Source of the DNA: Penicillus capitatus
Lineage: Eukaryota; Plantae; Chlorophyta
Assembly (NCBI GenBank): GCA_965649825.1
Contig: OZ287705.1
Span: 704,214 to 768,213, forward strand
Length of the DNA stretch: 64,000 nucleotides
Direction: 5' to 3'
Shown piece after piece: positions 10,651 to 64,000 of the stretch (its first letter is position 1; each line of letters opens with the position of its first letter). The position numbers and the translations under genes are program-made. The notes below the pieces were generated by a model, which was not told the origin of the DNA, did not search any database, and saw only the letters and a program-made list of their open reading frames with translations.

Positions 10651-11832
10651 TCATTGATAAGTGTGACCTTTCAAATGATAGGCCTCGTAGGACGATCCCC
10701 TCGTCTTTTCGACAGGTATCGTGGCCATAACCGGCATGAATTGCGCAAAAACCGATGCCGCTAGTCCGCTGAGCTGAATACCGAGAAAGCCGTGCTGCTT
10801 TTCTCGATGCGTTTCTTCTCTGTCCCTACACCGCCGCCACACAGATGTACTGAGTCGACGGGAGAGATGCCGTTCTCACTCTAAGGCTTGGCAGAAGGCT
10901 TTCATCACTCGGTATTCACCGTAGGTTGTCTTTCCGTGCGAGTCCGAAGGAACCACGCGATAGACAGAAAGAGATAAAGCGGAGGAGTCGGCATCGGTGC
11001 TTTCGATCACAAAATGCAGCTCTCCGGCTGATCGAATGCGATTGTGGTCGGTCGTGATGAATGCCAGACGGACGCCCTCTGCAATGTCGTCGCACTGAAT
11101 CGCCACGATGCGACGGAAAGGAGAAAGGACAGAAGGGATGGACCTGCAGTGGCCATGGCAGAGGCAGATCGGCAGCAAAGATGAAGGTTTTGGCCCATTC
11201 CCTCAACCAAACGACGGTCTCTCGCATCTTTTCATCCCGCACTGCATCCATACCCACACGCGTGACGGACCTATGGTCCAGGAAGACGCAGAGGAGACCT
11301 GCGGCGTTCGAATGCCCTTCAAAAATTGTCCGCTGCATGACGATCTCGGCGTCTGTTAAAGGACCGATGATGCCTGGCTGGTCTTTAAAGCTTCGTTTCC
11401 ACGATCTTTCCGTCAACGGCACGGAAGCCAGTCTGCGATCGTAGCTCTGACGCAGGTGGGGATCGATCAGTGTGTGATAGGCACGATTGAGCGTAGAACT
11501 GGTTTCCTGCCATCATCCATGGTCAGGCATCTCGCCGGTGGTCAGCATAAAGGTCCGAACCTCTTGGCCGCTGACATCTGGATGATGCTGTTTCTGCAAA
11601 CGGCGAAAACTGTGTTTGATCTCCGCGACTGCAGCACAAAGAAAGCGTCAGAGCGTCGCGTAGGCGTCTGTTCTGACGGACCCGTGGCGTCCGCGTCGAT
11701 CTGCAGCACATCGTAGTAGTCGACAAAATCTCCGCTGCTTTTCTCTTTCGTTGCGCAGCGCTGCTGCGTTGGACGCGAAAGGTACACGCGTCGGACAAAT
11801 CGCGGTCGGCCGGTCAGTGGTGTTACATTCAT
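10651..11832 (-). CDS. J-domain (DnaJ-like) protein with probable plastid transit peptide
   Basis: Spliced DYYDVLQIDADATVAEIKHSFRRLQKQHHPDV...LNRAYHTLIDPHLRQSYD contains the HPD motif; Arg/Ser-rich N-terminus; unrecognised C-terminal domain. Confidence 0.8.
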
Positions 11833-15438: not shown

Positions 15439-16121
15439 TCAACGTGGCCAGACAACACAGAGCAGTACACGTTCAGTTGTATCAATCAATCGACAACAGT
15501 CTACGCAATTCCAATCCACTAACGCCGCTGGAAAAACGGTTCCTACTGTGGGAACGCAGCTACGCCCGTTTGAATTGATAAGAGGCGTTGTTGGAAGAGA
15601 TTTTTTGAGCTTCGAGGCACAAGTCAACAAGTCGCGTCGTGCGATAAGCGCCCTTCTTTTCCTAAGGCTTTGATGGAACAAACGTCTGACTGGACGCTTT
15701 GGATAAGCTCCTTGTAAGATGTCTTCTAACCGACACGCATCTTCGTCATCTGCGAAAAAATGCACGCCGTGTAAATGACGACGCGGGAGTTTCTGTGTCT
15801 TGTCGTCTCGGTGAATGCCGCCCTTGCATTTGAGCTCGGCATCGGTCGGCCGAAGGAGACGGAGAGCGTCTTGACGCATTCGCCATTGATGACGGTCGCG
15901 TCTTCGAGACACCAGGAGCATTGAGAGACGTCAACGGCGGGGGTTGCCTCCTTGCGCTGATTGGACACCGTGTCCAGCTCTGTCCAGTAGCGCCGCCGGT
16001 TGGCGAATTGGCGGCGGAGGCGGATGTTGACGTTCTTCTCGGTGAGCTGCACGACGATATCCGCGACGCTTTGCAAAAGGGCGACGAAAACAGTCCCACA
16101 ACATGAGATGGTTTTGTACAT
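15439..16121 (-). CDS. Hypothetical gene immediately downstream of ispE (frame and exon structure unresolved)
   Basis: 131-codon ORF 16121-15726 starts at an ATG overlapping the ispE stop; alternative ATG at 16104; 160-codon open frame 15921-15439; acceptor-like TTTTTTCGCAG near 15750. Confidence 0.35.
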
Positions 16122-17254
16122 CACCCTTGTACGACGGCACTGGTCGTCCAGGCATTGCTCGGCGTGTACCACTTCCCCGCCATCCGGTTGATAAGTCGAG
16201 CAGGCGAGACGAACAGATCGCTGTATTTTTCTTCCTTGGATAGGAAATCGGGAACGTCGTCCGATCCAAAGCATACGATGGTGCTGCCGCTGCCTGTCAT
16301 GAAAACCGATTCGAAATTGCCTTCCCGTTTCAGCCTTTCTTTCAGTTCCGCCAGCTCCGGAAGAATGGAGAAGGCAGGAGGCTCAAGATCGTTGACACAC
16401 AGCTCCTGGGTGATCGTGCCTCTCTGCCGCAACCCATCGAGCAACTCCAGTGGATCTGCCATGCTGCGGCCGTCCAAATCCAGTGTCTTGAAAATCTGAG
16501 GCGTCAATAGACTGACGGGAGGCTTGACGAGGAGCATCGGCGTGGACAACGGTATCGGCGGCATCACGTTCTCCACAATCTCCCCGCGACCTGCATCCCC
16601 TCGCATTGCCATTGAAAACCGCAAGAGAGAGGACCTGTGCAGTAGGCAGCGCCTTCGGAGAAGAAGACGGAGATGTCAGATCCGATCTCCCCCGACCAAT
16701 CCAGCAGATCCTGATTCGATGCAACCTGCAGCACAAGAGGGGTAACACGGTTGCGATGCTGCCGGAGGGGCAACGTTTCCGCAGATTTCGTTGGCTGCCC
16801 ACAGAGTAGTGGCTGCGTTTGCACTTCCGCCGCCGAGTCCAGCTCCATGAGGCACCGTCTTCTGCAGGTCGATATCGAAATGCTGTTGGATGTCCGTCTT
16901 GGAACGGTAGAGATTCAATGCCTTGATGACGAGATTGGAATCGTCAGTCGGAATGTCGGCGATGTTACACGTCAATCGATCGCTCTTTCCTTCGATGGGT
17001 GCCATCTCCATACGGTCTCCCAAATCGATGACATGAAAAAGAGATGCCAGATCATGAAAGCCATCTGGCCGACGCCCCATGATTCTCAAAAACAGGTTAA
17101 TTTTAGAGGGAGAAAACACCGACAGTCGATCGGATGCGCCCAGTGCACTTGGTCGTGCCACACAGCGACGCTTTGGTGAATGTGCGTGATACCATCGGCC
17201 TAAGGGTCCACGGTTATGCGTAGGGGTCTCCGATCTCAGACGCAGAAGAGACAT
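16121..17254 (-). CDS. ispE: 4-diphosphocytidyl-2-C-methyl-D-erythritol kinase, plastid (MEP pathway)
   Basis: SPSKINLFLRI...FHDLASLFHVIDLGD, DDSNLVIKAL, GHMP motif KTVPHGAGLGGGSANAA, VFMTGSGSTIV; N-terminal transit peptide with no other Met before the catalytic domain. Confidence 0.95.
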
Positions 17255-17562
17255 CAGGTGGATTTTGGCGTTTCAACGTCGAGAGCGACGTAGGGTTTCA
17301 ATTCGAAGTTCAGTAAAGAAGGCACGACGTATCTCGGCCTCTTCAAGGGAGACACAATGTATCCTCCTGCAGACATCCCTCGCCTGAGCAGACCTTCGCT
17401 TTCTGGCGACAGAGATCGACCTTTGGCCGTGTGTCTTCCTGTCGGCAGGCACCCTTTGCCCTTAAAGTATGTTTTTGCGCCGCGTTTTGAGCTGAGTTGC
17501 CAGTAGCCTTTCGTCGGTGCACGCTTTGCTCGCACAAAGGCAGCCAAGATGCGTGTAAGCAT
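17254..17562 (-). CDS. MRPL41: Mitochondrial ribosomal protein mL41 (one 54-nt in-frame intron 17367-17420)
   Basis: LSSKRG...YFKGKGCLPTGRHTAKGGYIV...YVVPSLLNFELKPYV is the mL41/Mrpl27 signature. Confidence 0.9.
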   Translation of the reverse strand: MLTRILAAFVRAKRAPTKGYWQLSSKRGAKTYFKGKGCLPTGRHTAKGRSLSPESEGLLRRGMSAGGYIVSPLKRPRYVVPSLLNFELKPYVALDVETPKST

Positions 17563-17705
17563 GCCGATGGATGATGTGACTGGCTGGGATCAACGGATTC
17601 AGAGTATTCATCCGTACGACCCTTTCGGCGGCGCAGAGCAATCGACCAGACCATAAAGACAGCACCTCCGAGCACTGCAAATTCTTGCCGATTTCGATAG
17701 CCACG

Positions 17706-19968
17706 ATGTCCGACGTGTTACAGAGTCATGCCTCCCTCTTTGACGAGAAGGTGATGGAGATGACGTCGAGGAGTCACCGTCAAGCACGACGCTTCTGTCT
17801 TTGTGCAGACCAGTGGATTTCTGCAGTCTTTGGTGGCGGAAGGCCAAGAGCATCTGTTTCGCGATTGGCCAGCACTCGGTATTCCTTTCAGACAGCGAAA
17901 CGTCGCATCGCGAGTGGAGATGGTTGGTAGGAACGGGCGACGACGATAAGAAGAGATTAGTGACGCAGCTTCAGGGGATCGATGCATCGACGGAAGGAGG
18001 TCTCATCGAATACGTCCGTCGAGCCAAAAAGCTCCTCGACGAATCCAAACGCGGTGCGCATCGTCCTGCGTCTGGTGTCCCCGCACAGGCGTCGGTGGAT
18101 GTGTAGGGGTGAATCCAATGGACGGCTATACGCCCAGTGTGCCAACCGGCAAGAGCCTCGACTTTGGCAGCGATGCATTTCAGCAGCTAGAGAATCAAGG
18201 CAGAGAGACATCGATCATCGAGATATCGGCAAAGCGGTGTTGTGTGATGCAGGCGTCGTCGAAGCGGGGAAGTCTGTCTTTGTGTTGGTGGCCGGCGGCT
18301 TAGGAGAGCGTCTCGGGTTTTCTGGCATCAAAGTGGCGCTTCCGTGCGAGACGGCCAGATACACTTCGTTCCTGCAGCTGTACATTGAGAGCATTCTGGC
18401 CATCCAGGCCAAGGCCCGGAAAGAAGGCAGTCCTGATCTTCTCCTTCCTTTTGTCCTGATGACGTCGGATGACACGCACGCGCGAACAATGGACTTCCTC
18501 GAACAGCATCAGTACTTTGGCATGCAGAAAGAGCAAGTGTGATTTTGTGTGACCGTATGAAGATAGCGAAGAGCGGGTGTGTGGTGTGGACGCAGGTGCA
18601 TGTCTTAAAGCAAGAGAAGGTGGCATGTCTGGCAGACAGCGATGCACGTATCGCTCTGGAGAAGAACGATGCCTATGTCGTAGAGACGAAGCCGCACGGC
18701 CATGGCGATATCCATTCCTTGATCCATTCGAGCGGCCTGCTGTCGGGCTGGGTGGCACAGGGCCTCAAATGGCTCTGTATCTTTCAGGATACGAATGCTC
18801 TCGTTTTCAATGGACTGTTAGCGGCACTGGGTGTCAGCGCCGCCGAAAACTATGACATGAATTCTCTGGCCGTTCCGAGAAAGGCCAAAGAGGCGATCGG
18901 TGCGATCGCTACGCTGAAACACGAGAACGGATCGGAGATCACGATCAACGTCGAGTACAACCAGTTGGATCCGATGCTGCGGAACACCATTAACAAAGAA
19001 GGAGATGTCAATGACGCCACAGGATTCTCCCCGTTTCCTGGCAACGTCAATCAGTTGGTGTTCAAAGTGTGACTTGTGTGGTGTGATGTGACGTGGCCAC
19101 GATGGATGTCTGTTTGTGCTTAGCTGGATACATACATGGAGCAGCTGAAGAAGACAAGTGGCCTCATTTCGGAATTCGTCAATCCAAAATACAAAGATGC
19201 CACGAAAACGGCGTTCCAGAAATCGACCCGACTCGAATGCATGATGCAAGACTATCCAAAAACGCTCTCGGCGGAAGCGAAGGTCGGATTTACCACCATC
19301 AACCAGGTCCGTCTCTTCAGACCTGTCACATCATCGTTCAGTATCAGGCGTAGGTGTGGGCAACGTACTCTCCTGTCAAGAACGCCGTGGCGGCGGCTGT
19401 GAAGAAGGTCGAGGAGGGATGCCCACCGCACAGCGCGACGGCAGCAGAGGCAGATCTGTATGAGTCCAATTGCAAGAGGCTAACGCAGATCGGCGTACAC
19501 GTCGGCGAAGCGGACGTCTATACCTTCAACGGCATGCAGACGACGTTCCATCCACGTGTGATGATCACGCCTTCCTTTGCCTTGACGTTTCAAGATCTAA
19601 AGGTGCGTGGCCTCACACGGTGAAAGAATACAGAGGCGATGCCGGACGTTGGATCCAGGACAAATTTCCGTCCCCTTCACGCGTGACCATCAAGAAAGGA
19701 TCCGTGTGTATCTTGGACGGATCCAGCATCACGGTCGAGGATCTGGAATTGGACGGCGCGCTCGTCGTGTCAACCACGAATGCATTGACGATCAAGGATG
19801 CAAAGGTACGAGCCTTGGCGTTGTCGAATTGCTCAATCGGCGGCGTGTGTCTTGCAGATCGCTAACAAAGGATGGGCAGTGAAAGCCGTGGAGGACGACA
19901 GTGCAGTGGCCGAAGAGATTCGCATTCGCGGATTCATTTTTGACAAGATCGAGACGGAGACCATGTAA
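17706..19968 (+). CDS. USP: UDP-sugar pyrophosphorylase
   Basis: [87 protein letters not shown]. Confidence 0.95.
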
Positions 19969-51556: not shown

Positions 51557-54500
51557 GCACATCAGGTTGCAACCTGATCCGTAAGTACGATTTCGAAGTG
51601 CAAGATGCCGGCGCGACACGCTGCAGGCGCGTGTGGAAGTTGTCGGCCGGACCCATTAGGTGCGGTTGGATTTGAATTCGGCGGTAGAAATCGTCAGGTT
51701 TGGCGTATCCGACGGTCAGGGTGAAATTCCGGCTCGGCCAACGGAGGGCCGATAGTGCGCGAAGTCTGCCGTTGAGGGGTCGTAACACCTCTAAGAGCGT
51801 GTTGGGTGCGGATGGCGGGTCGCCCATCCCACCCCATTGGCGTCTTGGTGCGCCCAAGTGCTGGAGCCCAGCGGCACATCAGGTGTAACCTGACCTGTGA
51901 GTACGATCTGGAAGTGCACGATGCCGCCGGCGACACGGTCGAGCGAGGGTGGGGATGGGTCGGCGGGGTCGAGTGGATGCCGACGGACCCTTGATTGGAG
52001 CCCGACGGCGGCGTGCTCGGCCTGTGGCGCGGTATTTCCGGATTCGACATTTCGGCAGATTGCGGCCGACGGAGGGCCCACCGTCGGCAATCTTCGACGC
52101 AGACGGGTGCGGGACGCCTAGGGACACGTCGCGGATGCCAATCACCGGAGGCTCGTTTGGCTTTGGGCGGTGTCGTACGGGGTTGAAATCGTGGCGGTTA
52201 CGTCGCATCAGGTGTAACCTGGCCTGTCAGTACGATCTGGAAGTGCACGATGACGCCGGCGACACGGTCGAGCGAGGGTGGGGATGGGTCGGCGGGGTCG
52301 AGTGGATGCGGACGGACCCTTGGTTGGAGCCCGACGGCGGCGTGCTCGGCCTGTGGCGCGGCCTTTCCGGATTCGACATTTCGGCAGATTGCGGCCGACG
52401 GAAGGCCCACCGTCGGCAGTCTTCGACGCAGACGGGTGCGGGACGCCTCGGGACACACCGCGGATGCCGATCGGTGCAAGCTCGTTTGGCTTTGGGCGGT
52501 GTCGTACGGGGTTGAAATCGTGGCGGTTACGTCGCATCAGGTGTAACCTGGCCTGTCAGTACGATCCGGAAGTGCACGATGACGCCGGCGACACGGTCGA
52601 GCGAGGGTGGGGATGTGTCGGCGGGGTCGAGTGGATGCGGACGGACCCTTGGTTGGAGCCCGACGGCGGCGTGCTCGACCTGTGGCGCGGCCTTTCCGGA
52701 TTCGACATTTCGGCAGATTGCGGCCCACGGAGGGCCCACCGTCGGCAGTCTTCGACGCAGACGGGTGCGGGACGCCTCTGGACTCGCCGCGGATGCCGAT
52801 CACCGGAGGTTCGTTTGGCTCTGGGCGGTGTCGTACTTGGTTGAAATCGAGGCCGTTACGTCGCATCAGGTGTAACCTGGCCTGTCAGTACGATCTGGAA
52901 GTGCACGATGACGCCGGCGACACGGTCCAGCGAGGGCGGGGATGTGTCGGCGGGGTCGAGTGGATGCCGGAGGACCCTTGGTTGGAGCCCGACGGCGGCG
53001 TCCTCGGGCTGTGGCGCGGCGTTTCCGGATTCGACATTTCGGCAGACCACGGCCCACGGAGGGCCCACCGTCGGCAGTCTTCGACGCAGACGGGTGCGGG
53101 ACGCCTCGGGACACGTCGCGGATGCCGATCACCGGAGGTTCGTTTGGCTTTGGGCGGTGTCGTACTTGGTTGAAATCGAGGCCGTTACGTCGCATCAGGT
53201 GTAACCTGGCCTGTCAGTACGATCTGGAAGTGCACGATGACGCCGGCGACACGGTCCAGCGAGGGCGGGGATGTGTCGGCGGGGTCGAGTGGATGCCGGC
53301 GGACCCTTGGTTGGAGCCCGACGGCGGCGTCCTCGGGCTGTGGCGCGGCGTTTCCGGATTCGACATTTCGGCAGATTGCGGCCCACGGAGGGCCCACCGT
53401 CGGCAGTCTTCGACGCAGACGGGTGCGGGACGCCTCGGGACTCGCCGCGGATGCCAATCGGTGGAGGCTCGTTTGGCTTTGGGCGGTGTCGTACGGAGTT
53501 GAAATCGTGGCCGTTACGTCGCATCAGGTGTAACCTGGCCTGTCAGTACGATCTGGAAGTGCACGACGACGCCGGCGACACGGTCGAGCGAGGGTGGGGA
53601 TGTGTCGGCGGGGTCGAGTGGATGCTGTAGGACCCTTGGTTGGAGCCCGACGGCGGCGTCCTCGGGCTGTGGCGCGGCCTTTCCGGATTCGACATTTCGG
53701 CAGATTGCGGCCGACGGCGGGCCCACCGTCGGCAATCTTCGACGCAGACGGGTGCGGGACGCCTCGGGACTCGCCGCGGATGCCAATCGGTGGAGGCTCG
53801 TTTGGCTTTGGGCGGTGTCGTACGGAGTTGAAATCGAGGCCGTTACGTCGCATCAGGTGTAACCTGGCCTGTCAGTGACTCGCAGAAGTGCACGACGACG
53901 CCGGCGACACGGTCGAGCGAGGGTGGGGATGTGTCGGCGGGGTCGAGTGGATGCTGTAGGACCCTTGGTTGGAGCCCGACGGCGGCGTGCTCGGGCTGTG
54001 GCGCGACCTTTCCGGATTCGACATTTCGGCACACTGCGGCCGACGGAGGGCCCACCGTCGGCAGTCTTCGACGCAGACGGGTGCGGGACGCCTCGGGACA
54101 CACCGCGGATGCCAATCGGTGGAGGCTCGTTTGGCTCTGGGCGGTGTCGCACTTGGTTGAAATCGAGGCCGTTACGTCGCATCAGGTGTAACCTGGCCTG
54201 TCAGTACGATCTGGAAGTGCACGATGACGCCGGCGACGCGGTCGAGCGAGGGCGGCAATGTGTCGGCGGGGTCGAGTGGATGCCGACGGACCCTTGGTTG
54301 GAGCCCGACGGCGGCGTGCTCGGGCTGTGGCGCGACCTTTCCGGATTCGACATTTCGGCACACTGCGGCCGACGGAGGGCCCACCGTCGGCAGTCTTCGA
54401 CGCAGACGGGTGCGGGACGCCTCGGGACACACCGCGGATGCCAATCGGTGGAGGCTCGTTTGGCTCTGGGCGGTGTCGCACTTGGTTGAAATCGAGGCCG

Positions 54501-57500
54501 TTACGTCGCATCAGGTGTAACCTGGCCTGTCAGTACGATCTGGAAGTGCACGATGACGCCGGCGACGCGGTCGAGCGAGGGCGGCAATGTGTCGGCGGGG
54601 TCGAGTGGATGCCGACGGACCCTTGGTTGGAGCCCGACGGCGGCGTGCTCGGGCTGTGGCGCGACCTTTCCGGATTCGACATTTCGGCAGACCGCGGCCG
54701 ACGGAGGGCCCACCGTCGGCAGTCTTCGACGCAGACGGGTGCGGGACGTCTCGGGACACACCGCGGATGCCGATCGGTGCAAGCTCGTTTGGCTTCGGGC
54801 GGTGTCGTACTTGGTTGAAATCGAGGCCGTTACGTCGCATCAGGTGTAACCTGGCCTGTCAGTACGATAAGGAAGTGCACGATGACGCCGGCGACGCGGT
54901 CGAGCGAGGGCGGCAATGTGTCGGCGGGGTCGAGTGGATGCCGACGGACCCTTGGTTGGAGCCCGACGGCGGCGTCCTCGGGCTGTGGCGCGACCTTTCC
55001 GGATTCGACATTTCGGCAGACCGCGGCCGACGGAGGGCCCACCGTCGGCAGTCTTCGACGCAGACGGGTGCGGGACGTCTCGGGACACACCGCGGATGCC
55101 GATCGGTGCAAGCTCGTTTGGCTTTGGGCGGTGTCGTACTTGGTTGAAATCGAGGCCGTTACGTCGCATCAGGTGTAACCTGGCCTGTCAGTACGATCTG
55201 GAAGTGCACGATGACGCCGGCGACGCGGTCGAGCGAGGGTGGGGATGGGTCGGCGGGGTCGAGTGGATGCGGACGGACCCAAGTTTGGCGACCGACGGCG
55301 GCGTTCTCGGGCTGTGGCGCGGCCTTTCCGGATTCGACATTTCGGCAGATTGCGGCCCACGGAGGGCCCACCGTCGGCAGTCTTCGACGCAGACGGGTGC
55401 GGGACGCCTCGGGACACACCGCGGATGCCGATCGGTGCAAGCTCGTTTGGCTCTGGGCGGTGTCGTACTTGGTTGAAATCGTGGCGGTCACGTCGCATCA
55501 GGTGTAACCTGGCCTGTCAGTACGATCTGGAAGTGCACGATGCCGCCGGCGACACGGTCGAGCGAGGGTGGGAATGTGTCGGCGGGGTCGAGTGGATGCT
55601 GACGGACCCTTGGTTGGAGCCCGACGGCGGCGTGCTCGGGCTGTGGCGCGACCTTTCCGGATTCGACATTTCGGCAGATTGCGGCCCACGGAGGGCCCAC
55701 CGTCGGCAGTCTTCGACGCAGACGGGTGCGGGACGCCTCTGGACTCGCCGCGGATGCCGATCACCGGAGGTTCGTTTGGCTCTGGGCGGTGTCGTACTTG
55801 GTTGAAATCGAGGCCGTTACGTCGCATCAGGTGTAACCTGGCCTGTCAGTACGATCTGGAAGTGCACGATGACGCCGGCGACACGGTCCAGCGAGGGCGG
55901 GGATGTGTCGGCGGGGTCGAGTGGATGCCGGAGGACCCTTGGTTGGAGCCCGACGGCGGCGTCCTCGGGCTGTGGCGCGGCGTTTCCGGATTCGACATTT
56001 CGGCAGACCACGGCCCACGGAGGGCCCACCGTCGGCAGTCTTCGACGCAGACGGGTGCGGGACGCCTCGGGACACGTCGCGGATGCCGATCACCGGAGGT
56101 TCGTTTGGCTTTGGGCGGTGTCGTACTTGGTTGAAATCGAGGCCGTTACGTCGCATCAGGTGTAACCTGGCCTGTCAGTACGATCTGGAAGTGCACGACG
56201 ACGCCGGCGACACGGTCGAGCGAGGGTGGGGATGGGTCGGCGGGGTCGAGTGGATGCCGACGGACCCTTGGTTGGAGCCCGACGGCGGCGTGCTCGGGCT
56301 GTGGCGCGACCTTTCCGGATTCGACATTTCGGCACACTGCGGCCGACGGAGGGCCCACCGTCGGCAACCTTCGACGCAGACGGGTGCGGGACGCCTCGGG
56401 ACACGTCGCAGATGCCAATCGGTGGAGGCTCGTTTGGCTCTGGGCGGTGTCGTACGGAGTTGAAATCGTGGCGGTCACGTCGCATCAGGTGTAACCTGGC
56501 CTGTCAGTACGATCTGGAAGTGCACGACGACGCCGGCGACGCGGTCCAGCGAGGGTGGGGATGTGTCGGCGGGGTCGAGTGGATGCCGACGGACCCTTGG
56601 TTGGAGCCCGACGGCGGCGTCCTCGGGCTGTGGCGCGGCCTTTCCGGATTCGACATTTCGGCAGATGACGGCCGACGGAGGGCCCACCGTCGGCAGTCTT
56701 CGACGCAGACGGGTGCGGGACGCCTCGGGACACACCGCGGATGCCAATCGGTGGAGGCTCGTTTGGCTCTGGGCGGTGTCGTACGGAGTTGAAATCGAGG
56801 CCGTTACGTCGCATCAGGTGTAACCTGGCCTGTCAGTGACTCGCAGAAGTGCACGACGACGCCGGCGACACGGTCGAGCGAGGGTGGGGATGTGTCGGCG
56901 GGGTCGAGTGGATGCCGACGGACCCTTGGTTGGAGCCCGACGGCGGCGTGCTCGGCCTGTGGCGCGACCTTTCCGGATTCGACATTTCGGCACACTGCGG
57001 CCGACGGAGGGCCCACCGTCGGCAGTCTTCGACGCAGACGGGTGCGGGACGCCTCGGGACACACCGCGGATGCCAATCGGTGGAGGCTCGTTTGGCTCTG
57101 GGCGGTGTCGCACTTGGTTGAAATCGAGGCCGTTACGTCGCATCAGGTGTAACCTGGCCTGTCAGTACGATCTGGAAGTGCACGATGACGCCGGCGACGC
57201 GGTCGAGCGAGGGCGGCAATGTGTCGGCGGGGTCGAGTGGATGCCGACGGACCCTTGGTTGGAGCCCGACGGCGGCGTGCTCGGGCTGTGGCGCGACCTT
57301 TCCGGATTCGACATTTCGGCAGATTGCGGCCCACGGAGGGCCGACCGTCGGCAGTCTTCGACGCAGACGGGTGCGGGACGCCTCGGGACACGTCGCGGAT
57401 GCCAATCGGTGGAGGCTCGTTTGGCTTTGGGCGGTGTCGTACTTGGTTGAAATCGTGGCGGTCACGTCGCATCAGGTGTAACCTGGCCTGTCAGTACGAT

Positions 57501-60500
57501 CTGGAAGTGCACGATGACGCCGGCGACACGGTCGAGCGAGGGTGGGAATGTGTCGGCGGGGTCGAGTGGATGCCGACGGACCCTTGGTTGGAGCCCGACG
57601 GCGGCGTACTCGGGCTGTGGCGCGACCTTTCCGGATTCGACATTTCGGCAGATTGCGGCCCACGGAGGGCCCACCGTCGGCAGTCTTCGACGCAGACGGG
57701 TGCGGGACGCCTCTGGACTCGCCGCGGATGCCGATCACCGGAGGTTCGTTTGGCTCTGGGCGGTGTCGTACTTGGTTGAAATCGAGGCCGTTACGTCGCA
57801 TCAGGTGTAACCTGGCCTGTCAGTACGATCTGGAAGTGCACGATGACGCCGGCGACACGGTCCAGCGAGGGCGGGGATGTGTCGGCGGGGTCGAGTGGAT
57901 GCCGGAGGACCCTTGGTTGGAGCCCGACGGGGGCGTCCTCGGGCTGTGGCGCGGCGTTTCCGGATTCGACATTTCGGCAGACCACGGCCCACGGAGGGCC
58001 CACCGTCGGCAGTCTTCGACGCAGACGGGTGCGGGACGCCTCGGGACACGTCGCGGATGCCGATCACCGGAGGTTCGTTTGGCTTTGGGCGGTGTCGTAC
58101 TTGGTTGAAATCGAGGCGGTCACGTCGCATCAGGTGTAACCTGGCCTGTCAGTACGATCTGGAAGTGCACGACGACGCCGGCGACACGGTCGAGCGAGGG
58201 TGGGGATGGGTCGGCGGGGTCGAGTGGATGCCGACGGACCCTTGGTTGGAGCCCGACGGCGGCGTCCTCGGGCTGTGGCGCGGCCTTTCCGGATTCGACA
58301 TTTCGGCAGATGACGGCCCACGGAGGGCCCACCGTCGGCAACCTTCGACGCAGTCGGGTGCGGGACGCCTCGGGACACGTCGCAGATGCCAATCGGTGGA
58401 GGCTCGTTTGGCTCTGGGCGGTGTCGTACGGAGTTGAAATCGTGGCGGTCACGTCGCATCAGGTGTAACCTGGCCTGTCAGTACGATCTGGAAGTGCACG
58501 ACGACGCCGGCGACGCGGTCCAGCGAGGGTGGGGATGTGTCGGCGGGGTCGAGTGGATGCCGACGGACCCTTGGTTGGAGCCCGACGGCGGCGTCCTCGG
58601 GCTGTGGCGCGGCCTTTCCGGATTCGACATTTCGGCAGATGACGGCCGACGGAGGGCCCACCGTCGGCAGTCTTCGACGCAGACGGGTGCGGGACGCCTC
58701 GGGACACACCGCAGATGCCAATCGGTGGAGGCTCGTTTGGCTCTGGGCGGTGTCGTACGGAGTTGAAATCGAGGCGGTCACGTCGCATCAGGTGTAACCT
58801 GGCCTGTCAGTACGATCTGGAAGTGCACGATGACGCCGGCGACACGGTCCAGCGAGGGCGGGGATGTGTCGGCGGGGTCGAGTGGATGCCGGCGGACCCT
58901 TGGTTGGAGCCCGACGGCGGCGTCCTCGGGCTGTGGCGCGGCGTTTCCGGATTCGACATTTCGGCAGATTGCGGCCCACGGAGGGCCCACCGTCGGCAGT
59001 CTTCGACGCAGACGGGTGCGGGACGCCTCGGGACTCGCCGCGGATGCCAATCGGTGGAGGCTCGTTTGGCTTTGGGCGGTGTCGTACGGAGTTGAAATCG
59101 TGGCCGTTACGTCGCATCAGGTGTAACCTGGCCTGTCAGTACGATCTGGAAGTGCACGACGACGCCGGCGACACGGTCGAGCGAGGGTGGGGATGTGTCG
59201 GCGGGGTCGAGTGGATGCTGTAGGACCCTTGGTTGGAGCCCGACGGCGGCGTCCTCGGGCTGTGGCGCGGCCTTTCCGGATTCGACATTTCGGCAGACTG
59301 CGGCCGACGGCGGGCCCACCGTCGGCAATCTTCGACGCAGACGGGTGCGGGACGCCTCGGGACTCGCCGCGGATGCCAATCGGTGGAGGCTCGTTTGGCT
59401 TTGGGCGGTGTCGTACGGAGTTGAAATCGAGGCCGTTACGTCGCATCAGGTGTAACCTGGCCTGTCAGTGACTCGCAGAAGTGCACGACGACGCCGGCGA
59501 CACGGTCGAGCGAGGGTGGGGATGTGTCGGCGGGGTCGAGTGGATGCCGACGGACCCTTGGTTGGAGCCCGACGGCGGCGTGCTCGGCCTGTGGCGCGGC
59601 CTTTCCGGATTCGACATTTCGGCACACTGCGGCCCACGGCGGGCCCACCGTCGGCAGTCTTCGACGCAGACGGGTGCGGGACGCCTCGGGACTCGCCGCG
59701 GATGCCAATCGGTGGAGGTTCGTATGGCTCTGGGCGCTGTCGTACTTGGTTGAAATCGTGGCGGTCACGTCGCATCAGGTGTAACCTGGCCCGTCAGTAC
59801 GATCTGGAAGTGCACGACGACGCCGGCGACGCGGTCGAGCGAGGGTGGGGATGTGTCGGCGGGGTCGAGTGGATGCCGACGGACCCTTGGTTGGAGCCCG
59901 ACGGCGGCGTGCTCGGCCTGTGGCGCGGCCTTTCCGGATTCGACATTTCGGCACACTACGGCCGACGGCGGGCCCGCCGTCGGCAATCTTCGACGCAGAC
60001 GGGTGCGGGACGCCTCGGGACTCGCCGCGGATGCCAATCGGTGGAGGTTCGTATGGCTCTGGGCGCTGTCGTACTTGGTTGAAATCGTGGCGGTTACGTC
60101 GCATCAGGTGTAACCTGGCCTGTCAGTACGATCTGGAAGTGCACGATGACGCCGGCGACACGGTCGAGCGAGGGTGGGGATGGGTCGGCGGGGTCGAGTG
60201 GATGCCGACGGACCCTTGGTTGGAGCCCGACGGCGGCGTCCTCGGGCTGTGGCGCGGCCTTTCCGGATTCGACATTTCGGCAGACTACGGCCCACGGCGG
60301 GCCCACCGTCGGCAGTCTTCGACGCAGACGGGTGCGGGACGCCTCGGGACTCGCCGCGGATGCCAATCGGTGGAGGTTCGTATGGCTCTGGGCGCTGTCG
60401 TACTTGGTTGAAATCGTGGCCGTTACGTCGCATCAGGTGTAACCTGGCCTGTCAGTACGATCTGGAAGTGCACGATGACGCCGGCGACACGGTCGAGCGA

Positions 60501-63500
60501 GGGTGGGGATGGGTCGGCGGGGTCGAGTGGATGCCGACGGACCCTCGGTTGGAGCCCGACGGCGGCGTCCTCGGGCTGTGGCGCGGCCTTTCCGGATTCG
60601 ACATTTCGGCACACTACGGCCCACGGCGGGCCCACCGTCGGCAATCTTCGACGCAGACGGGTGCGGGACGCCTCGGGACTCGCCGCGGATGCCAATCGGT
60701 GGAGGTTCGTATGGCTCTGGGCGGTGTCGCACTTGGTTGAAATCGAGGCGGTCACGTCGCATCAGGTGTAACCTGGCCTGTCAGTACGATCTGGAAGTGC
60801 ACGAGGACGCCGGCGACACGGTCGAGCGAGGGTGGGGATGGGTCGGCGGGGTCGAGTGGATGCCGACGGACCCTTGGTTGGAGCCCGACGGCGGCGTGCT
60901 CGACCTGTGGCGCGGCCTTTCCGGATTCGACATTTCGGCAGACCACGGCCCACGGAGGGCCCACCGTCGGCAATCTTCGACGCAGACGGGTGCGGGACGC
61001 CTCGGGACACACCGCGGATGCCGATCGGCGGAGGCTCGTTTGGCTCTGGGCGGTGTCGTACGGAGTTGAAATCGAGGCGGTCACGTCGCATCAGGTGTAA
61101 CCTGGCCTGTCAGTGACTCGCAGAAGTGCACGATGCCGCCGGCGACACGGTCGAGCGAGGGTGAGAATGTGTCGGCGGGGTCGATTGGATGCCGACGGAC
61201 CCTTGGTTGGAGCCCGACGGCGGCGTCCTCGGGCTGTGGCGCGGCCTTTCCGGATTCGACATTTCGGCACACCACGGCCCACGGAGGGCCGACCGTCGGC
61301 AGACTTCAAAGCAGACGGGTGCGGGACGCCTCGGGACACACCGCGGATGCCAATCGGTGGAGGCTCGTTTGGCTCTGGGCGGTGTCGTACGGAGTTGAAA
61401 TCGAGGCGGTCACGTCGCATCAGGTGTAACCTGGCCTGTCAGTGACTCGCAGAAGTGCACGATGCCGCCGGCGACACGGTCGAGCGAGGGTGGGGATGTG
61501 TCGGCGGGGTCGAGTGGATGCCGACGGACCCTTGGTTGGAGCCCGACGGCGGCGTTCTCGGGCTGTGGCGCGGCCTTTCCGGATTCGACATTTCGGCAGA
61601 TTGCGGCCGACGGAGGGCCGACCGTCGGCAGTCTTCGACGCAGACGGGTGCGGGACGCCTCGGGACACGTCGCGGATGCCGATCACCGGAGGTTCGTTTG
61701 GCTCTGGGCGGTGTCGTACTTGGTTGAAATCGTGGCGGTCACGTCGCATCAGGTGTAACCTAGCCTGTCAGTACGATCTGGAAGTGCACGACGACGCCGG
61801 CGACACGGTCCAGCGAGGGTGGGAATGTGTCGGCGGGGTCGAGTGGATGCCGACGGACCCTTGGTTGGAGCCCGACGGCGGCGTGCTCGGCCTGTGGCGC
61901 CGCCTTTCCGGATTCGACATTTCGGCACACTACGGCCGACGGAGGGCCCACCGTCGGCAGTCTTCGACGCAGACGGGTGCGGGACGCCTCGGGACACGTC
62001 GCGGATGCCAATCGGCGGAGGCTCGTTTGGCTCTGGGCGCTGTCGTACTTGGTTGAAATCGAGGCGGTCAAGTCGCATCAGGTGTAACCTGGCCTGTCAG
62101 TACGATCTGGAAGTGCACGATGACGCCGGCGACACGGTCGAGCGAGGGCGGCAATGTGTCGGCGGGGTCGAGTGGATGCCGACGGACCCTTGGTTGGAGC
62201 CCGACGGCGGCGTTCTCGGGCTGTGGCGCGGCCTTTCCGGATTCGACATTTCGGCAGACTACGGCCGACGGAGGGCCCACCGTCGGCAGTCTTCGACGCA
62301 GACGGGTGCGGGACGCCTCGGGACACGTCGCGGATGCCGATCGGTGGAGGCTCGTTTGGCTTTGGGCGGTGTCGTACTTGGTTGAAATCGAGGCGGTTAC
62401 GTCGCATCAGGTGTAACCTGGCCTGTCAGTACGATCTGGAAGTGCACGATGCCGCCGGCGACACGGTCCAGCGAGGGTGGGAATGTGTCGGCGGGGTCGA
62501 GTGGATGCCGACGGACCCTTGGTTGGAGCCCGACGGCGGCGTTCTCGGGCTGTGGCGCGGCCTTTTCGGATTCGACATTTCGGCACACTACGGCCGACGG
62601 AGGGCCCACCGTCGGCAGACTACGACGCAGACGGGTGCGGGACGCCTCGGGACACACCGCGGATGCCGATCGGTGGAGGCTCGTTTGGCTTTGGGCGCTG
62701 TCGTACGGAGTTGAAATCGTGGCGGTTACGTCGCATCAGGTGTAACCTGGCCTGTCAGTACGATCTGGAAGTGCACGATGACGCCGGCGACACGGTCCAG
62801 CGAGGGTGGGAATGTGTCGGCGGGGTCGAGTGGATGCCGACGGACCCTTGGTTGGAGCCCGACGGCGGCGTTCTCGGGCTGTGGCGCGGCCTTTTCGGAT
62901 TCGACATTTCGGCACACTACGGCCGACGGAGGGCCCACCGTCGGCAGACTACGACGCAGACGGGTGCGGGACGCCTCGGGACACACCGCGGATGCCGATC
63001 GGTGGAGGCTCGTTTGGCTTTGGGCGCTGTCGTACGGAGTTGAAATCGTGGCGGTTACGTCGCATCAGGTGTAACCTGGCCTGTCAGTACGATCTGGAAG
63101 TGCACGACGACGCCGGCGACACGGTCGAGCGAGGGCGGCAATGTGTCGGCGGGGTCGAGTGGATGCCGACGGACCCTTGGTTGGAGCCCGACGGTGGCGT
63201 CCTCGGGCTGTGGCGCGACCTTTCCGGATTCGACATTTCGGCAGATTGCGGCCGACGGAGGGCCCACCGTCGGCAGACTACGACGCAGACGGGTGCGGGA
63301 CGCCTCGGGACACACCGCGGATGCCAATCGGTGGAGGCTCGTTTGGCTTTGGGCGCTGTCGTACTTGGTTGAAATCGTGGCGGTTACGTCGCATCAGGTG
63401 TAACCTGGCCTGTCAGTACGATCTGGAAGTGCACGATGACGCCGGCGACACGGTCGAGCGAGGGTGGGAATGTGTCGGCGGGGTCGAGTGGATGCCGACG

Positions 63501-64000
63501 GACCCTTGGTTGGAGCCCGACGGCGGCGTTCTCGGATTCGACATTTCGGCAGATTGCGGCCGACGGAGGACCGACCGTCGGCAGACTACGACGCAGACGG
63601 GTGCGGGACGCCTCGGGACACACCGCGGATGCCAATCGGTGGAGGCTCGTTTGGCTTTGGGCGCTGTCGTACGGAGTTGAAATCGTGGCGGTTACGTCGC
63701 ATCAGGTGTAACCTGGCCTGTCAGTACGATCTGGAAGTGCACGATGCCGCCGGCGACACGGTCCAGCGAGGGTGGGAATGTGTCGGCGGGGTCGAGTGGA
63801 TGCGGACGGACCCTTGGTTGGAGCCCGACGGCGGCGTTCTCGGGCTGTGGCGCGGCCTTTTCGGATTCGACATTTCGGCAGATTGCGACCCACGGAGGAC
63901 CGACCGTCGGCAGACTACGACGCAGACGGGTGCGGGACGCCTCGGGACACACCGCGGATGCCAATCGGTGGAGGCTCGTTTGGCTTTGGGCGCTGTCGTA
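51557..64000. repeat. GC-rich 329-bp tandem satellite, about 37 copies plus one diverged edge monomer; runs off the window
   Basis: Anchor CGCATCAGGTGTAACCTGGCCTGTCAG recurs every 329 nt (e.g. the repeat-derived ORFs at 52208, 52537, 52866 ... 62078); one copy is 308 nt. Confidence 0.98.

What the first reader, a model, noticed from the sequence alone, without database searches (positions are those of the whole stretch)
16119..17562. Operon-like TGATG stop/start coupling of nuclear MRPL41 and plastid ispE: candidate bicistronic mRNA
Seen: on the minus strand the MRPL41 TGA (17256-17254) shares its A with the ispE ATG (17254-17252). This ATG is the only in-frame Met before the conserved SPSKINLFL kinase start, so ispE must begin there to keep its transit peptide. 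The spliced MRPL41 CDS (about 250 nt) has no internal AUG in any frame; the only one lies inside the 54-nt intron. Known: bicistronic nuclear loci translated by leaky scanning occur in Chlamydomonas and Chromochloris, often with short AUG-poor upstream ORFs. Minus-one TGATG overlaps are typical of bacterial translational coupling and viral termination-reinitiation. Inference: one mRNA feeds a mitochondrial ribosomal protein and a plastid MEP enzyme, with zero intercistronic spacer.
Basis: partly seen in the sequence, partly recalled or inferred. Interest (0 to 1): 0.85.

Follow-up and report, generated by a model that had tools for sequence, protein, structure and literature searches.

The report
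Candidate two-gene messenger in green alga
In an uncultured green alga a small mitochondrial ribosomal protein gene ends exactly where a chloroplast isoprenoid-pathway kinase gene begins; related algae keep this join, so it is probably one more example of the two-proteins-from-one-mRNA genes already known in green algae, though no RNA data exist to prove it.

Summary
On the minus strand, MRPL41/mL41 (17562..17254, with a 54-nt intron) ends in a TGA whose A starts the ATG of ispE (17254..16121, two introns). The spliced MRPL41 has no internal ATG, and this ATG is the only possible ispE start.

New evidence comes from three further genomic sources. L002/L003 has TGATG again. L004 has TAA plus 7 nt, and L029 has TAA plus 6 nt. 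In all four the first ATG after the MRPL41 ATG is the ispE ATG. Third-codon identity of only 0.39-0.44 shows deep divergence.

The pairing is specific to this lineage. Auxenochlorella, Nannochloris and 19 metagenome MRPL41 loci lack it.

The locus fits the validated green-algal bicistrons translated by leaky scanning (Gallaher 2021; Duenas 2025), in which 5 of 43 Auxenochlorella loci already have a zero spacer. The arrangement is therefore a new member of a known kind, not a new mechanism.

Three caveats apply:
- No transcript evidence exists for this lineage.
- ATG-free MRPL41 also occurs in monocistronic relatives.
- The genome is very compact, so overlapping separate mRNAs remain possible.

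Confidence in a bicistronic mRNA with leaky scanning is about 0.6.

The parts
17421..17562 (-). MRPL41 (mL41) exon 1; ATG at 17562-17560 in the context cggcATGc
   Evidence: Pfam PF09809. 79% identical to L002 exon 1 by tblastx. Context.
17367..17420 (-). MRPL41 intron: 54 nt, GT..AG, phase 1, in frame and without a stop. It holds the only ATG between the two start codons.
   Evidence: The same intron position occurs in L002 (51 nt), L004 (39 nt, with an in-frame stop) and L029 (40 nt). Homologues lack the insert.
17254..17366 (-). MRPL41 exon 2, ending in TGA at 17256-17254
17252..17256 (-). TGATG junction. The MRPL41 stop and the ispE start share the A at 17254.
   Evidence: The identical overlap is present in L002 and in the independent sample L003.
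16775..17254 (-). ispE exon 1: an N-terminal extension of about 45 residues (putative chloroplast transit peptide), the SPSKINLFL motif and the GHMP_kinases_N domain
   Evidence: The TIGR00154 alignment starts at residue 46.
16726..16774 (-). ispE intron 1 (49 nt, GT..AG)
   Evidence: The intron position is shared with L004 and L029.
16635..16725 (-). ispE exon 2
   Evidence: 87% identical to L004 and L029 by tblastx.
16591..16634 (-). ispE intron 2 (44 nt, GT..AG)
16121..16590 (-). ispE exon 3 (GHMP_kinases_C domain), with stop TGA at 16123-16121
17563..17705 (.). 143-bp head-to-head spacer between the MRPL41 ATG and the ATG of the divergent UDP-sugar pyrophosphorylase gene (17706, + strand). 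It presumably holds a bidirectional promoter and a very short MRPL41 5'UTR. On the MRPL41 strand, upstream ATGs lie at -49 and -92.
   Evidence: The same arrangement occurs in L002; my reading of that sequence gives about 127 bp. The promoter role is inferred.
15439..16121 (-). Downstream remnant or truncated gene (ORF3). It starts at a second TGATG (16123-16119) and is homologous to the C-terminal part of a 404-aa protein of L004 with a weak CS-domain match. There is an apparent frame change near 15845. It probably serves as 3' flank or 3'UTR rather than as a third cistron.

Best explanation
The locus is a nuclear bicistronic transcription unit of the kind already validated in green algae.

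- Transcription starts in the roughly 143-bp region shared head-to-head with the UDP-sugar pyrophosphorylase gene, giving a short 5'UTR (inferred).
- The three short introns are removed (shown by homology).
- The mature capped mRNA carries MRPL41 (84 codons, mitochondrial ribosomal protein mL41) followed directly by ispE (346 codons, plastid-targeted CDP-ME kinase of the MEP pathway).
- Some scanning 40S subunits start at the MRPL41 AUG, whose context is never optimal (no A at -3, no G at +4).
- The others scan on. They meet no AUG in 251 nt, so they start at the next AUG, which is the ispE start (inferred mechanism: leaky scanning).
- The overlap UGAUG is simply the shortest possible spacer.
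- The pairing arose in the common ancestor of the window organism, L002/L003 and L004/L029, and has been kept since then.
For: 1. Both ORFs are genuine genes under purifying selection.
- PF09809 scores 57.8 bits and TIGR00154 scores 183.2 bits.
- MRPL41 codon-position identities, window versus L002, are 0.78/0.88/0.44.

2. The join is conserved in diverged relatives.
- L002 and L003 are the same species from two samples; both have TGATG.
- L004 has TAA plus 7 nt, and L029 has TAA plus 6 nt.
- ispE is only about 76% identical between the window and L004.
- The flanks of the junction are only 28/65 identical.

3. In all four, the first ATG after the MRPL41 ATG in the spliced RNA is the ispE ATG. 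Two of the seven MRPL41 introns do contain an ATG.

4. An in-frame stop lies 9-45 nt upstream of every ispE ATG, so the start cannot be extended in the genomic sequence.

5. [quoted passage not shown] This argues against a fusion made by readthrough or frameshift.

6. The dimensions fit validated loci.
- Here ORF1 is 255 nt; the validated medians are 291-357 nt.
- Inter-ORF size is 0 in 5 of 43 Auxenochlorella loci, and many loci have no AUG before ORF2.

7. Leaky scanning was shown experimentally for such loci in A. protothecoides.

8. MRPL41 precedes another gene, KRI1, with a 39-nt spacer and no intervening ATG, on an MMETSP transcriptome contig (L028).
Against: - No RNA evidence exists. 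No transcript-derived protein of this lineage is in the databases searched.
- ATG-free MRPL41 is not specific to the paired state. With the amino-acid sequence fixed, P(0 ATG) is 0.2-0.7 per species. In L030, where the next called gene is on the opposite strand, the MRPL41 CDS has no internal ATG. The Auxenochlorella and Nannochloris proteins each have one internal Met.
- The lineage is very compact. In L004, same-strand CDS spacers are 85-204 nt, so transcription units that overlap without being functionally bicistronic are conceivable.
- The ispE AUG context in the window (C at -3, T at +4) and in L002 (T at -3, A at +4) is itself poor.
- No Kozak consensus could be derived for this genome.
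- The L028 contig could be an assembly merge of two overlapping mRNAs.
Confidence: 0.6

Rival explanations
1. There are two overlapping monocistronic mRNAs. Because the genome is extremely compact, ispE has its own TSS inside the MRPL41 gene, and MRPL41 is polyadenylated inside ispE. The tight join then reflects genome compaction only.
For: - In L004, same-strand CDS-to-CDS spacers are only 85-204 nt.
- The head-to-head ATGs in the window are 143 bp apart.
- ATG-free MRPL41 also occurs where the gene looks monocistronic.
- From my own knowledge: overlapping transcription without functional polycistrony is documented in compacted eukaryotic genomes (Williams et al. 2005 PNAS, a paper cited by PMC6009652, which came up).
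Against: - Spacers of -1 to +7 nt are an order of magnitude shorter than the other spacers in the same loci.
- They stay that short across lineages whose third codon positions are nearly saturated.
- Both a promoter and a poly(A) signal would have to sit inside conserved coding sequence.
- A TGTAA in ispE at about 16970 is not conserved in L004 (my reading).
- Green algae are known to use true bicistrons of exactly this geometry.
Confidence: 0.22
2. The mRNA is bicistronic, but ispE is translated mainly by termination-reinitiation. Ribosomes that finish MRPL41 at UGA restart at the overlapping or nearby AUG.
For: - The stop and the start are within -1 to +7 nt in all four loci.
- This proximity is not required by leaky scanning; validated loci have median spacers of 40-183 nt.
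- Duenas et al. state that some reinitiation cannot be excluded.
Against: - ORF1 is 84 codons long. Reinitiation efficiency falls with ORF length and is best for a few codons.
- No UGGGA (TURBS motif 1) occurs anywhere in ORF1 of any of the four loci.
- Experiments in A. protothecoides showed ORF2 output inversely related to ORF1 start strength, which is the opposite of what reinitiation predicts.
Confidence: 0.12
3. The ispE start is supplied differently. An upstream exon is spliced into the transit-peptide region, or a readthrough or frameshift product fuses MRPL41 to ispE.
For: AG dinucleotides exist downstream of the ATG within the poorly conserved transit-peptide region.
Against: - An in-frame stop lies 9-45 nt upstream in all loci, and the window has no AG in the 25 nt before the ATG.
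- An ATG is kept at this position in all four loci while the surrounding sequence diverges.
- The frame relation between the ORFs is not constant.
- None of the eight longest ispE proteins I read (P0021, P0026, P0027, P0046, P0068, P0075, P0111, P0116) carries an MRPL41-like N-terminus.
Confidence: 0.04

Closest known systems
Exclusively bicistronic nuclear loci of green algae (Gallaher et al. 2021, PMC7896298; Duenas et al. 2025, PMC11892635)
   Same: - A short conserved ORF1 (255 nt) is followed on the same strand by a longer ORF2.
- The inter-ORF distance is tiny or zero.
- No AUG lies before ORF2.
- The ORF1 start context is not optimal.
- The 5'UTR is probably short.
- ORF1 encodes a mitochondrial protein and the partner is functionally unrelated, which is common in those sets.
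- Collinearity is conserved between species.
   Different: - The MRPL41-ispE pair did not turn up in word searches of the Duenas 2025 main text or supplementary files. The supplementary lists of Gallaher 2021 are not held.
- MRPL41 is monocistronic in Auxenochlorella and Nannochloris.
- The host is an unidentified, uncultured lineage that branches near the base of the core chlorophytes in a rough ispE tree.
- Transcript and translation evidence, which defines the class, is missing here.
Viral termination-reinitiation at overlapping stop/start codons (calicivirus VP1/VP2, influenza B M1/BM2), and bacterial translational coupling
   Same: The UGAUG overlap of the stop and start codons.
   Different: - There is no TURBS-like UGGGA motif.
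- The related lineage uses 6-7 nt spacers.
- The complete absence of AUG in ORF1 is what leaky scanning needs. Reinitiation would need that only near the stop.
- Bacterial coupling relies on 70S/30S ribosomes and Shine-Dalgarno biology, which do not apply to a nuclear mRNA (established knowledge).
MRPL41-KRI1 transcript contig of an MMETSP alga (L028)
   Same: An orthologous MRPL41 (63% identical) is the first ORF and is AUG-free, with a second conserved gene 39 nt downstream on one assembled transcript.
   Different: - The partner gene is different (KRI1, a nucleolar ribosome-biogenesis factor).
- The spacer is longer.
- It is an RNA assembly, not genomic DNA, and could be a merge of overlapping mRNAs.
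Overlapping transcription in compacted eukaryotic genomes (nucleomorphs, microsporidia; Williams et al. 2005, from my own knowledge)
   Same: Very short intergenic spacers, so that mRNAs must contain parts of neighbouring genes.
   Different: In those systems the extra gene sequence is not translated from the shared RNA. Here the geometry (an AUG-free ORF1 directly ahead of ORF2) would allow translation of both.

Membership tests
Green-algal bicistronic nuclear loci (Gallaher 2021; Duenas 2025) | Two conserved protein-coding ORFs, collinear on one strand, with a very short inter-ORF distance | tested here: met
   The spacer is -1 nt. Both ORFs have family matches above the curated cut-offs.
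Green-algal bicistronic nuclear loci (Gallaher 2021; Duenas 2025) | Both ORFs found, exclusively, on one mature capped and polyadenylated transcript (Iso-Seq) | not testable with these tools
   No transcript-derived sequences of this lineage were found in the protein collection. All four loci contain introns, so they are genomic.
Green-algal bicistronic nuclear loci (Gallaher 2021; Duenas 2025) | ORF1 much shorter than ORF2 (median ORF1 291-357 nt) | tested here: met
   ORF1 is 255 nt and ORF2 is 1041 nt.
Green-algal bicistronic nuclear loci (Gallaher 2021; Duenas 2025) | Depletion of AUG between the ORF1 start and the ORF2 start | tested here: met
   There are zero ATGs in all four loci and in L028, against 3.4-3.9 expected from composition. 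This is not specific: P(0) is 0.2-0.7 once the protein sequence is fixed, and the L030 MRPL41, which looks monocistronic, is ATG-free too.
Green-algal bicistronic nuclear loci (Gallaher 2021; Duenas 2025) | ORF1 Kozak-like context weaker than the genome consensus and weaker than ORF2 | tested here: inconclusive
   ORF1 has G, C or G at -3 and C or T at +4. It never has A at -3 or G at +4. ORF2 has A at -3 in L004, L029 and L028, but C or T at -3 in the window and L002. No consensus for this genome could be built.
Green-algal bicistronic nuclear loci (Gallaher 2021; Duenas 2025) | Collinear pair conserved in other species | tested here: met
   L002/L003, L004 and L029 all have the pair. It is absent outside this clade.
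Green-algal bicistronic nuclear loci (Gallaher 2021; Duenas 2025) | Both ORFs translated (Ribo-seq or proteomics) | not testable with these tools
   Support is indirect only: the codon-position divergence pattern shows purifying selection on MRPL41, and ispE is a full-length equivalog match.
Termination-reinitiation (TURBS type) | Stop and restart codons overlapping or within a few nt | tested here: met
   UGAUG in the window and L002; 6-7 nt in L029 and L004.
Termination-reinitiation (TURBS type) | Upstream UGGGA-containing element that tethers 18S rRNA | tested here: not met
   No TGGGA occurs anywhere in the spliced ORF1 of any of the four loci. Complementarity to this organism's 18S rRNA could not be tested.
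SL trans-spliced operons (nematodes, kinetoplastids, tunicates) | An intercistronic region with a 3' splice acceptor for a spliced leader, downstream of the upstream gene's poly(A) signal | tested here: not met
   The spacer is -1 nt, and the window has no AG in the 25 nt before the ispE ATG.
mL41 / MRPL41 (Pfam PF09809) | Profile match above the gathering score; conserved KGKG...GRHT.KGGY...VPDL..F.LKPYV core | tested here: met
   57.8 bits against 25.
IspE, CDP-ME kinase (TIGR00154 equivalog) | Equivalog score above the cut-off; GHMP N and C domains; N-terminal PSKINLFL motif with the conserved Lys | tested here: met
   183.2 bits against 138.7. Pfam PF00288 and PF08544 match. Identity to green-algal ispE is 62-70%.

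The most novel reading that the evidence does not exclude
The stop-start proximity (-1 to +7 nt) is itself under selection, because ispE is made largely by ribosomes that have just finished MRPL41 (termination-reinitiation). The output of a plastid MEP-pathway enzyme would then be stoichiometrically coupled to that of a mitochondrial ribosomal protein. The window's second TGATG, at the ispE stop, might extend the coupling to a third ORF.

A milder variant: chlorophyte MRPL41, being ancestrally AUG-free, is a pre-adapted 'portable first cistron'. It has been captured independently upstream of different essential genes (ispE here, KRI1 in L028), which would show how algal bicistrons are born.
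Probability: 0.12. Interest if true: 0.65.

Novelty: new member of a known kind. Interest (0 to 1): 0.35.

Why it matters
If confirmed, this adds a new gene pair to the catalogue of green-algal bicistrons. The pair is conserved over deep divergence and comes from an uncultured lineage that branches near the base of the core chlorophytes, so it would extend the known phylogenetic spread of the phenomenon.

It also bears on two practical matters:
- The pair gives a natural series of spacers (-1, +6, +7 nt) with which to separate leaky scanning from reinitiation.
- Gene callers will mis-annotate such loci. The public prokaryote-style calls on this contig miss MRPL41 altogether.

With the MRPL41-KRI1 transcript, the locus hints that short AUG-free genes are the ones that become first cistrons. 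It does not reveal a new mechanism.

Tried and rejected
1. Transcript evidence.
- I searched the protein collection with spliced ispE, spliced MRPL41 and a three-sequence MRPL41 profile.
- Only intron-containing genomic contigs of this lineage were found.

2. A wider distribution of the pair.
- 19 MRPL41 loci from JGI metagenomes have no ispE nearby.
- An MMETSP ispE transcript starts 78-89 nt before its ATG, with no MRPL41.
- The best ispE hit (L008) is preceded by an isocitrate-lyase-like gene.
- In L030 and Nannochloris, MRPL41 lies between a protein kinase gene and an opposite-strand FKBP gene. In Auxenochlorella it lies between the kinase gene and a UbiA gene.

3. ATG depletion as proof. 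I rejected it as decisive after synonymous resampling and monocistronic controls.

4. TGATG as statistically special. I rejected this, because chance ORF overlaps abound in the window.

5. Fusion proteins. None of the eight long ispE models I read has an MRPL41 N-terminus.

6. Organism identity.
- Accession numbers gave no hit in the paper library.
- The window has no Rfam hit.
- A rough NJ tree gives only approximate placement.

7. Bacterial promoter and terminator scan. It is irrelevant for a eukaryote and was ignored.

8. Other bicistron candidates in the window. A crude scan found only repeat artefacts.

9. The known lists. Word searches for MRPL41, L41, L27, ispE, CMK, erythritol, GHMP and KRI1 found nothing in the Duenas 2025 main text or supplements. 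The Gallaher 2021 supplements are not held.
Full report
**What is there**

- The window has 54.5% G+C. It is part of a 285-kb ENA metagenome contig (ERZ25074695, ctg340182). The public gene calls on that contig are prokaryote-style and do not see introns.
- On the minus strand, an ORF at 17562..17254 matches Pfam PF09809, the mitochondrial ribosomal protein mL41/MRPL41 family.
- Removing a 54-nt GT..AG, phase-1 intron (17420..17367) turns two partial profile matches (44.7 bits) into one contiguous match (57.8 bits). It also restores the ...GRHTAKGGYIV... core seen in all homologues.
- The MRPL41 TGA (17256-17254) shares its A with an ATG (17254-17252). That ATG opens a three-exon gene, 17254..16121, with introns of 49 and 44 nt.
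- This gene is ispE. It scores 183.2 bits against TIGR00154 (cut-off 138.7), has the GHMP N and C domains, and is 62-70% identical to green-algal CDP-ME kinases.
- The bacterial-type profile aligns from residue 46. The first 45 or so residues, rich in R, S, A and P, are therefore an N-terminal extension, most simply a chloroplast transit peptide (inference).
- A stop in the ispE frame lies 21 nt upstream of the ATG, and no other Met precedes SPSKINLFL.
- The spliced MRPL41 has no further ATG in any frame. The single ATG between the two starts lies in the intron.

**Is it more than chance?**

- The pentamer alone is not. A crude scan shows dozens of stop/start overlaps between ORFs of at least 70 codons in this G+C-rich window.
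- The absence of ATG has P about 0.035 from base composition, but only about 0.2 when the amino-acid sequence is held fixed and codons are resampled.
- The signal lies in conservation, described next.

**Relatives**

- Searching with MRPL41 found three further genomic sources in which MRPL41 is directly followed by ispE on the same strand.
- L002 and L003 are one species assembled from two ENA samples. They again have ...CCT TGA TGA CA..., with the ATG in frame with ...LSVFSPSKINLFL....
- L002/L003 also have the same head-to-head UDP-sugar pyrophosphorylase neighbour as the window.
- L004 (Logan SRR2835676) has TAA plus 7 nt, and L029 (Logan ERR4592244) has TAA plus 6 nt.
- L004 and L029 share downstream synteny with the window.
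- In all four, the first ATG after the MRPL41 ATG in the spliced RNA is the ispE ATG, and an in-frame stop lies 9-45 nt upstream of it.
- The lineages are well diverged:
  - MRPL41 identity by codon position is 0.78/0.88/0.44 (window versus L002) and 0.79/0.79/0.39 (window versus L004).
  - ispE is about 76% identical between the window and L004.
  - The 65 nt around the junction are only 28/65 identical between the window and L002.
- The codon-position pattern also shows that MRPL41 is under purifying selection as a protein.
- The frame relation of the two ORFs varies (-1, -1, +7, +6), which argues against a fusion by readthrough or frameshift.

**The pair is specific to this lineage**

- 19 MRPL41 loci from JGI metagenomes have no ispE in their flanks.
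- An MMETSP ispE transcript begins 78-89 nt before its ATG.
- The closest ispE (L008) follows an isocitrate-lyase-like gene.
- In L030 and Nannochloris, MRPL41 lies between a protein kinase gene and an opposite-strand FKBP gene. In Auxenochlorella it lies between the kinase gene and a UbiA gene 586 bp downstream on the same strand. L038 also has the FKBP gene on the opposite strand. In all of these it looks monocistronic.
- A rough neighbour-joining tree of ispE puts the window, L004 and L029 together near the base of the core chlorophytes. The organism remains unidentified.

**Comparison with what is known**

- Green algae have tens to hundreds of loci whose only transcripts carry two or more ORFs (PMC7896298).
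- In the curated sets of C. reinhardtii (36 loci) and A. protothecoides (43 loci), the features are as follows (PMC11892635):
  - ORF1 is short, with medians of 357 and 291 nt.
  - Spacers are short, with medians of 183 and 40 nt.
  - 5'UTRs are short.
  - ORF1 start contexts are weak.
  - AUGs are depleted before ORF2.
  - Mutational tests show leaky scanning.
- The SI text says that many spacers are under 10 nt and that some A. protothecoides loci have overlapping ORF1 stop and ORF2 start codons. Dataset S01B lists five loci with an inter-ORF size of 0 and many with no AUG before ORF2.
- Proteins from such loci are often mitochondrial, and partners are usually functionally unrelated.
- The window locus (ORF1 255 nt, spacer -1, no AUG before ORF2, a mitochondrial ORF1 and a plastid ORF2) fits this class in every feature that DNA alone can show.
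- The MRPL41-ispE pair did not turn up in word searches of the Duenas 2025 text and supplements. The supplementary lists of Gallaher 2021 are not held.
- The locus is therefore a new member of a known kind.

**Mechanism**

- *Transcription (inferred).* It probably starts in the 143 bp between the MRPL41 ATG and the divergent pyrophosphorylase ATG at 17706. An out-of-frame ATG at -49 opens a 50-codon ORF, so the 5'UTR is probably shorter than 49 nt.
- *Leaky scanning (inferred by analogy).*
  - The ORF1 start contexts are cggcAUGc, tcgaAUGc, ggctAUGu (twice) and, in L028, tgccAUGu. None has A at -3 or G at +4.
  - ORF1 has no AUG, so subunits that pass its start initiate at ispE.
- *Reinitiation.* It cannot be excluded, and the tight spacing would suit it. 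However, ORF1 is 84 codons long, no UGGGA element is present, and the Auxenochlorella experiments contradict it as the main route.

**Weaknesses**

- There is no RNA evidence.
- ATG-free MRPL41 is widespread in chlorophytes. In L030, where the next called gene is on the opposite strand, the MRPL41 CDS has no internal ATG. Most green-algal homologues have no internal Met, though the Auxenochlorella and Nannochloris proteins each have one. The AUG-free state may therefore be a pre-adaptation rather than a consequence of the pairing.
- The lineage is extremely compact. L004 has six same-strand genes with CDS spacers of 7, 138, 112, 204 and 85 nt, and introns are 39-54 nt long. Separate but overlapping mRNAs, as in other compacted eukaryotic genomes, are therefore a real alternative.
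- The ispE AUG context in the window and in L002 has a pyrimidine at -3.

**A related observation**

- An MMETSP transcriptome contig (L028, 2835 nt) carries an orthologous MRPL41 at 135-392, then 39 nt, then a 703-residue KRI1 homologue at 432-2543, with no ATG between the two starts.
- This is either transcript-level evidence that MRPL41 can serve as a first cistron with a different partner, or an assembly merge of overlapping mRNAs.

**Verdict**

| Reading | Confidence |
|---|---|
| Bicistronic mRNA, leaky scanning | about 0.6 |
| Overlapping monocistronic mRNAs | about 0.22 |
| Bicistronic mRNA, mainly reinitiation | about 0.12 |
| Other start or fusion | about 0.04 |

- Novelty: a new member of a known kind.
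- Interest: 0.35.

Noticed in passing
window 16119-16123 and 15439-16121 (minus strand): There is a second TGATG at the ispE stop. The ATG opens an ORF homologous to residues ~204-330 of a 404-aa protein of L004 (2581-3795; weak CS-domain match). The N-terminal ~200 residues are absent from the window. The DnaJ gene that separates ispE from this gene in L004 and L029 is also absent here; only a weak DnaJ-like match lies at 11662..11420. The reading frame changes near 15845. This looks like a deletion remnant or pseudogene, or an assembly indel, rather than a third cistron.
   Followed up: partly
window 51877-64000: A tandem array with a 329-bp unit: 36.9 copies, 94% matches, no indels, running off the end of the window. 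It creates many artefactual ORF pairs on the minus strand.
   Followed up: no
window 17563-17705, with the ATG at 17706 (+): A UDP-sugar pyrophosphorylase (UDPGP) gene lies head-to-head with MRPL41, with only 143 bp between the two ATGs. L002 has the same arrangement (about 127 bp). This is probably a bidirectional promoter.
   Followed up: partly
L028 135-2543: An MMETSP transcriptome contig carries MRPL41 (85 aa), a 39-nt spacer and a KRI1 homologue (703 aa), with no ATG between the two starts. It may be an independent bicistron with MRPL41 as the first cistron.
   Followed up: partly
L004 571-597, L029 398-424, L028 130-141: Tiny upstream ORFs overlap the MRPL41 start codon. L004 and L029 have an 8-codon uORF with its ATG at -20, and L028 has a 3-codon uORF at -5. 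If they lie within the 5'UTR, they could divert ribosomes past the MRPL41 AUG towards ORF2.
   Followed up: no
window 17367-17420; L002 3843-3893: The MRPL41 intron is in frame and free of stops in the window (54 nt) and in L002 (51 nt). Intron retention would add 18 or 17 residues. In the window it would also put an in-frame AUG in the path of scanning ribosomes. The public gene call P0121 reads through the intron.
   Followed up: no
L004 590-5760: Six consecutive same-strand genes have CDS-to-CDS spacers of 7, 138, 112, 204 and 85 nt, and introns of 39-48 nt. This green-algal genome is unusually compact.
   Followed up: no
L001 5601-5912 (= window about 17654-17343, minus strand): The public prokaryote-style gene call on this contig picks an overlapping out-of-frame 103-aa ORF instead of MRPL41. 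As a result, the real MRPL41 of this organism is absent from the protein collection.
   Followed up: yes
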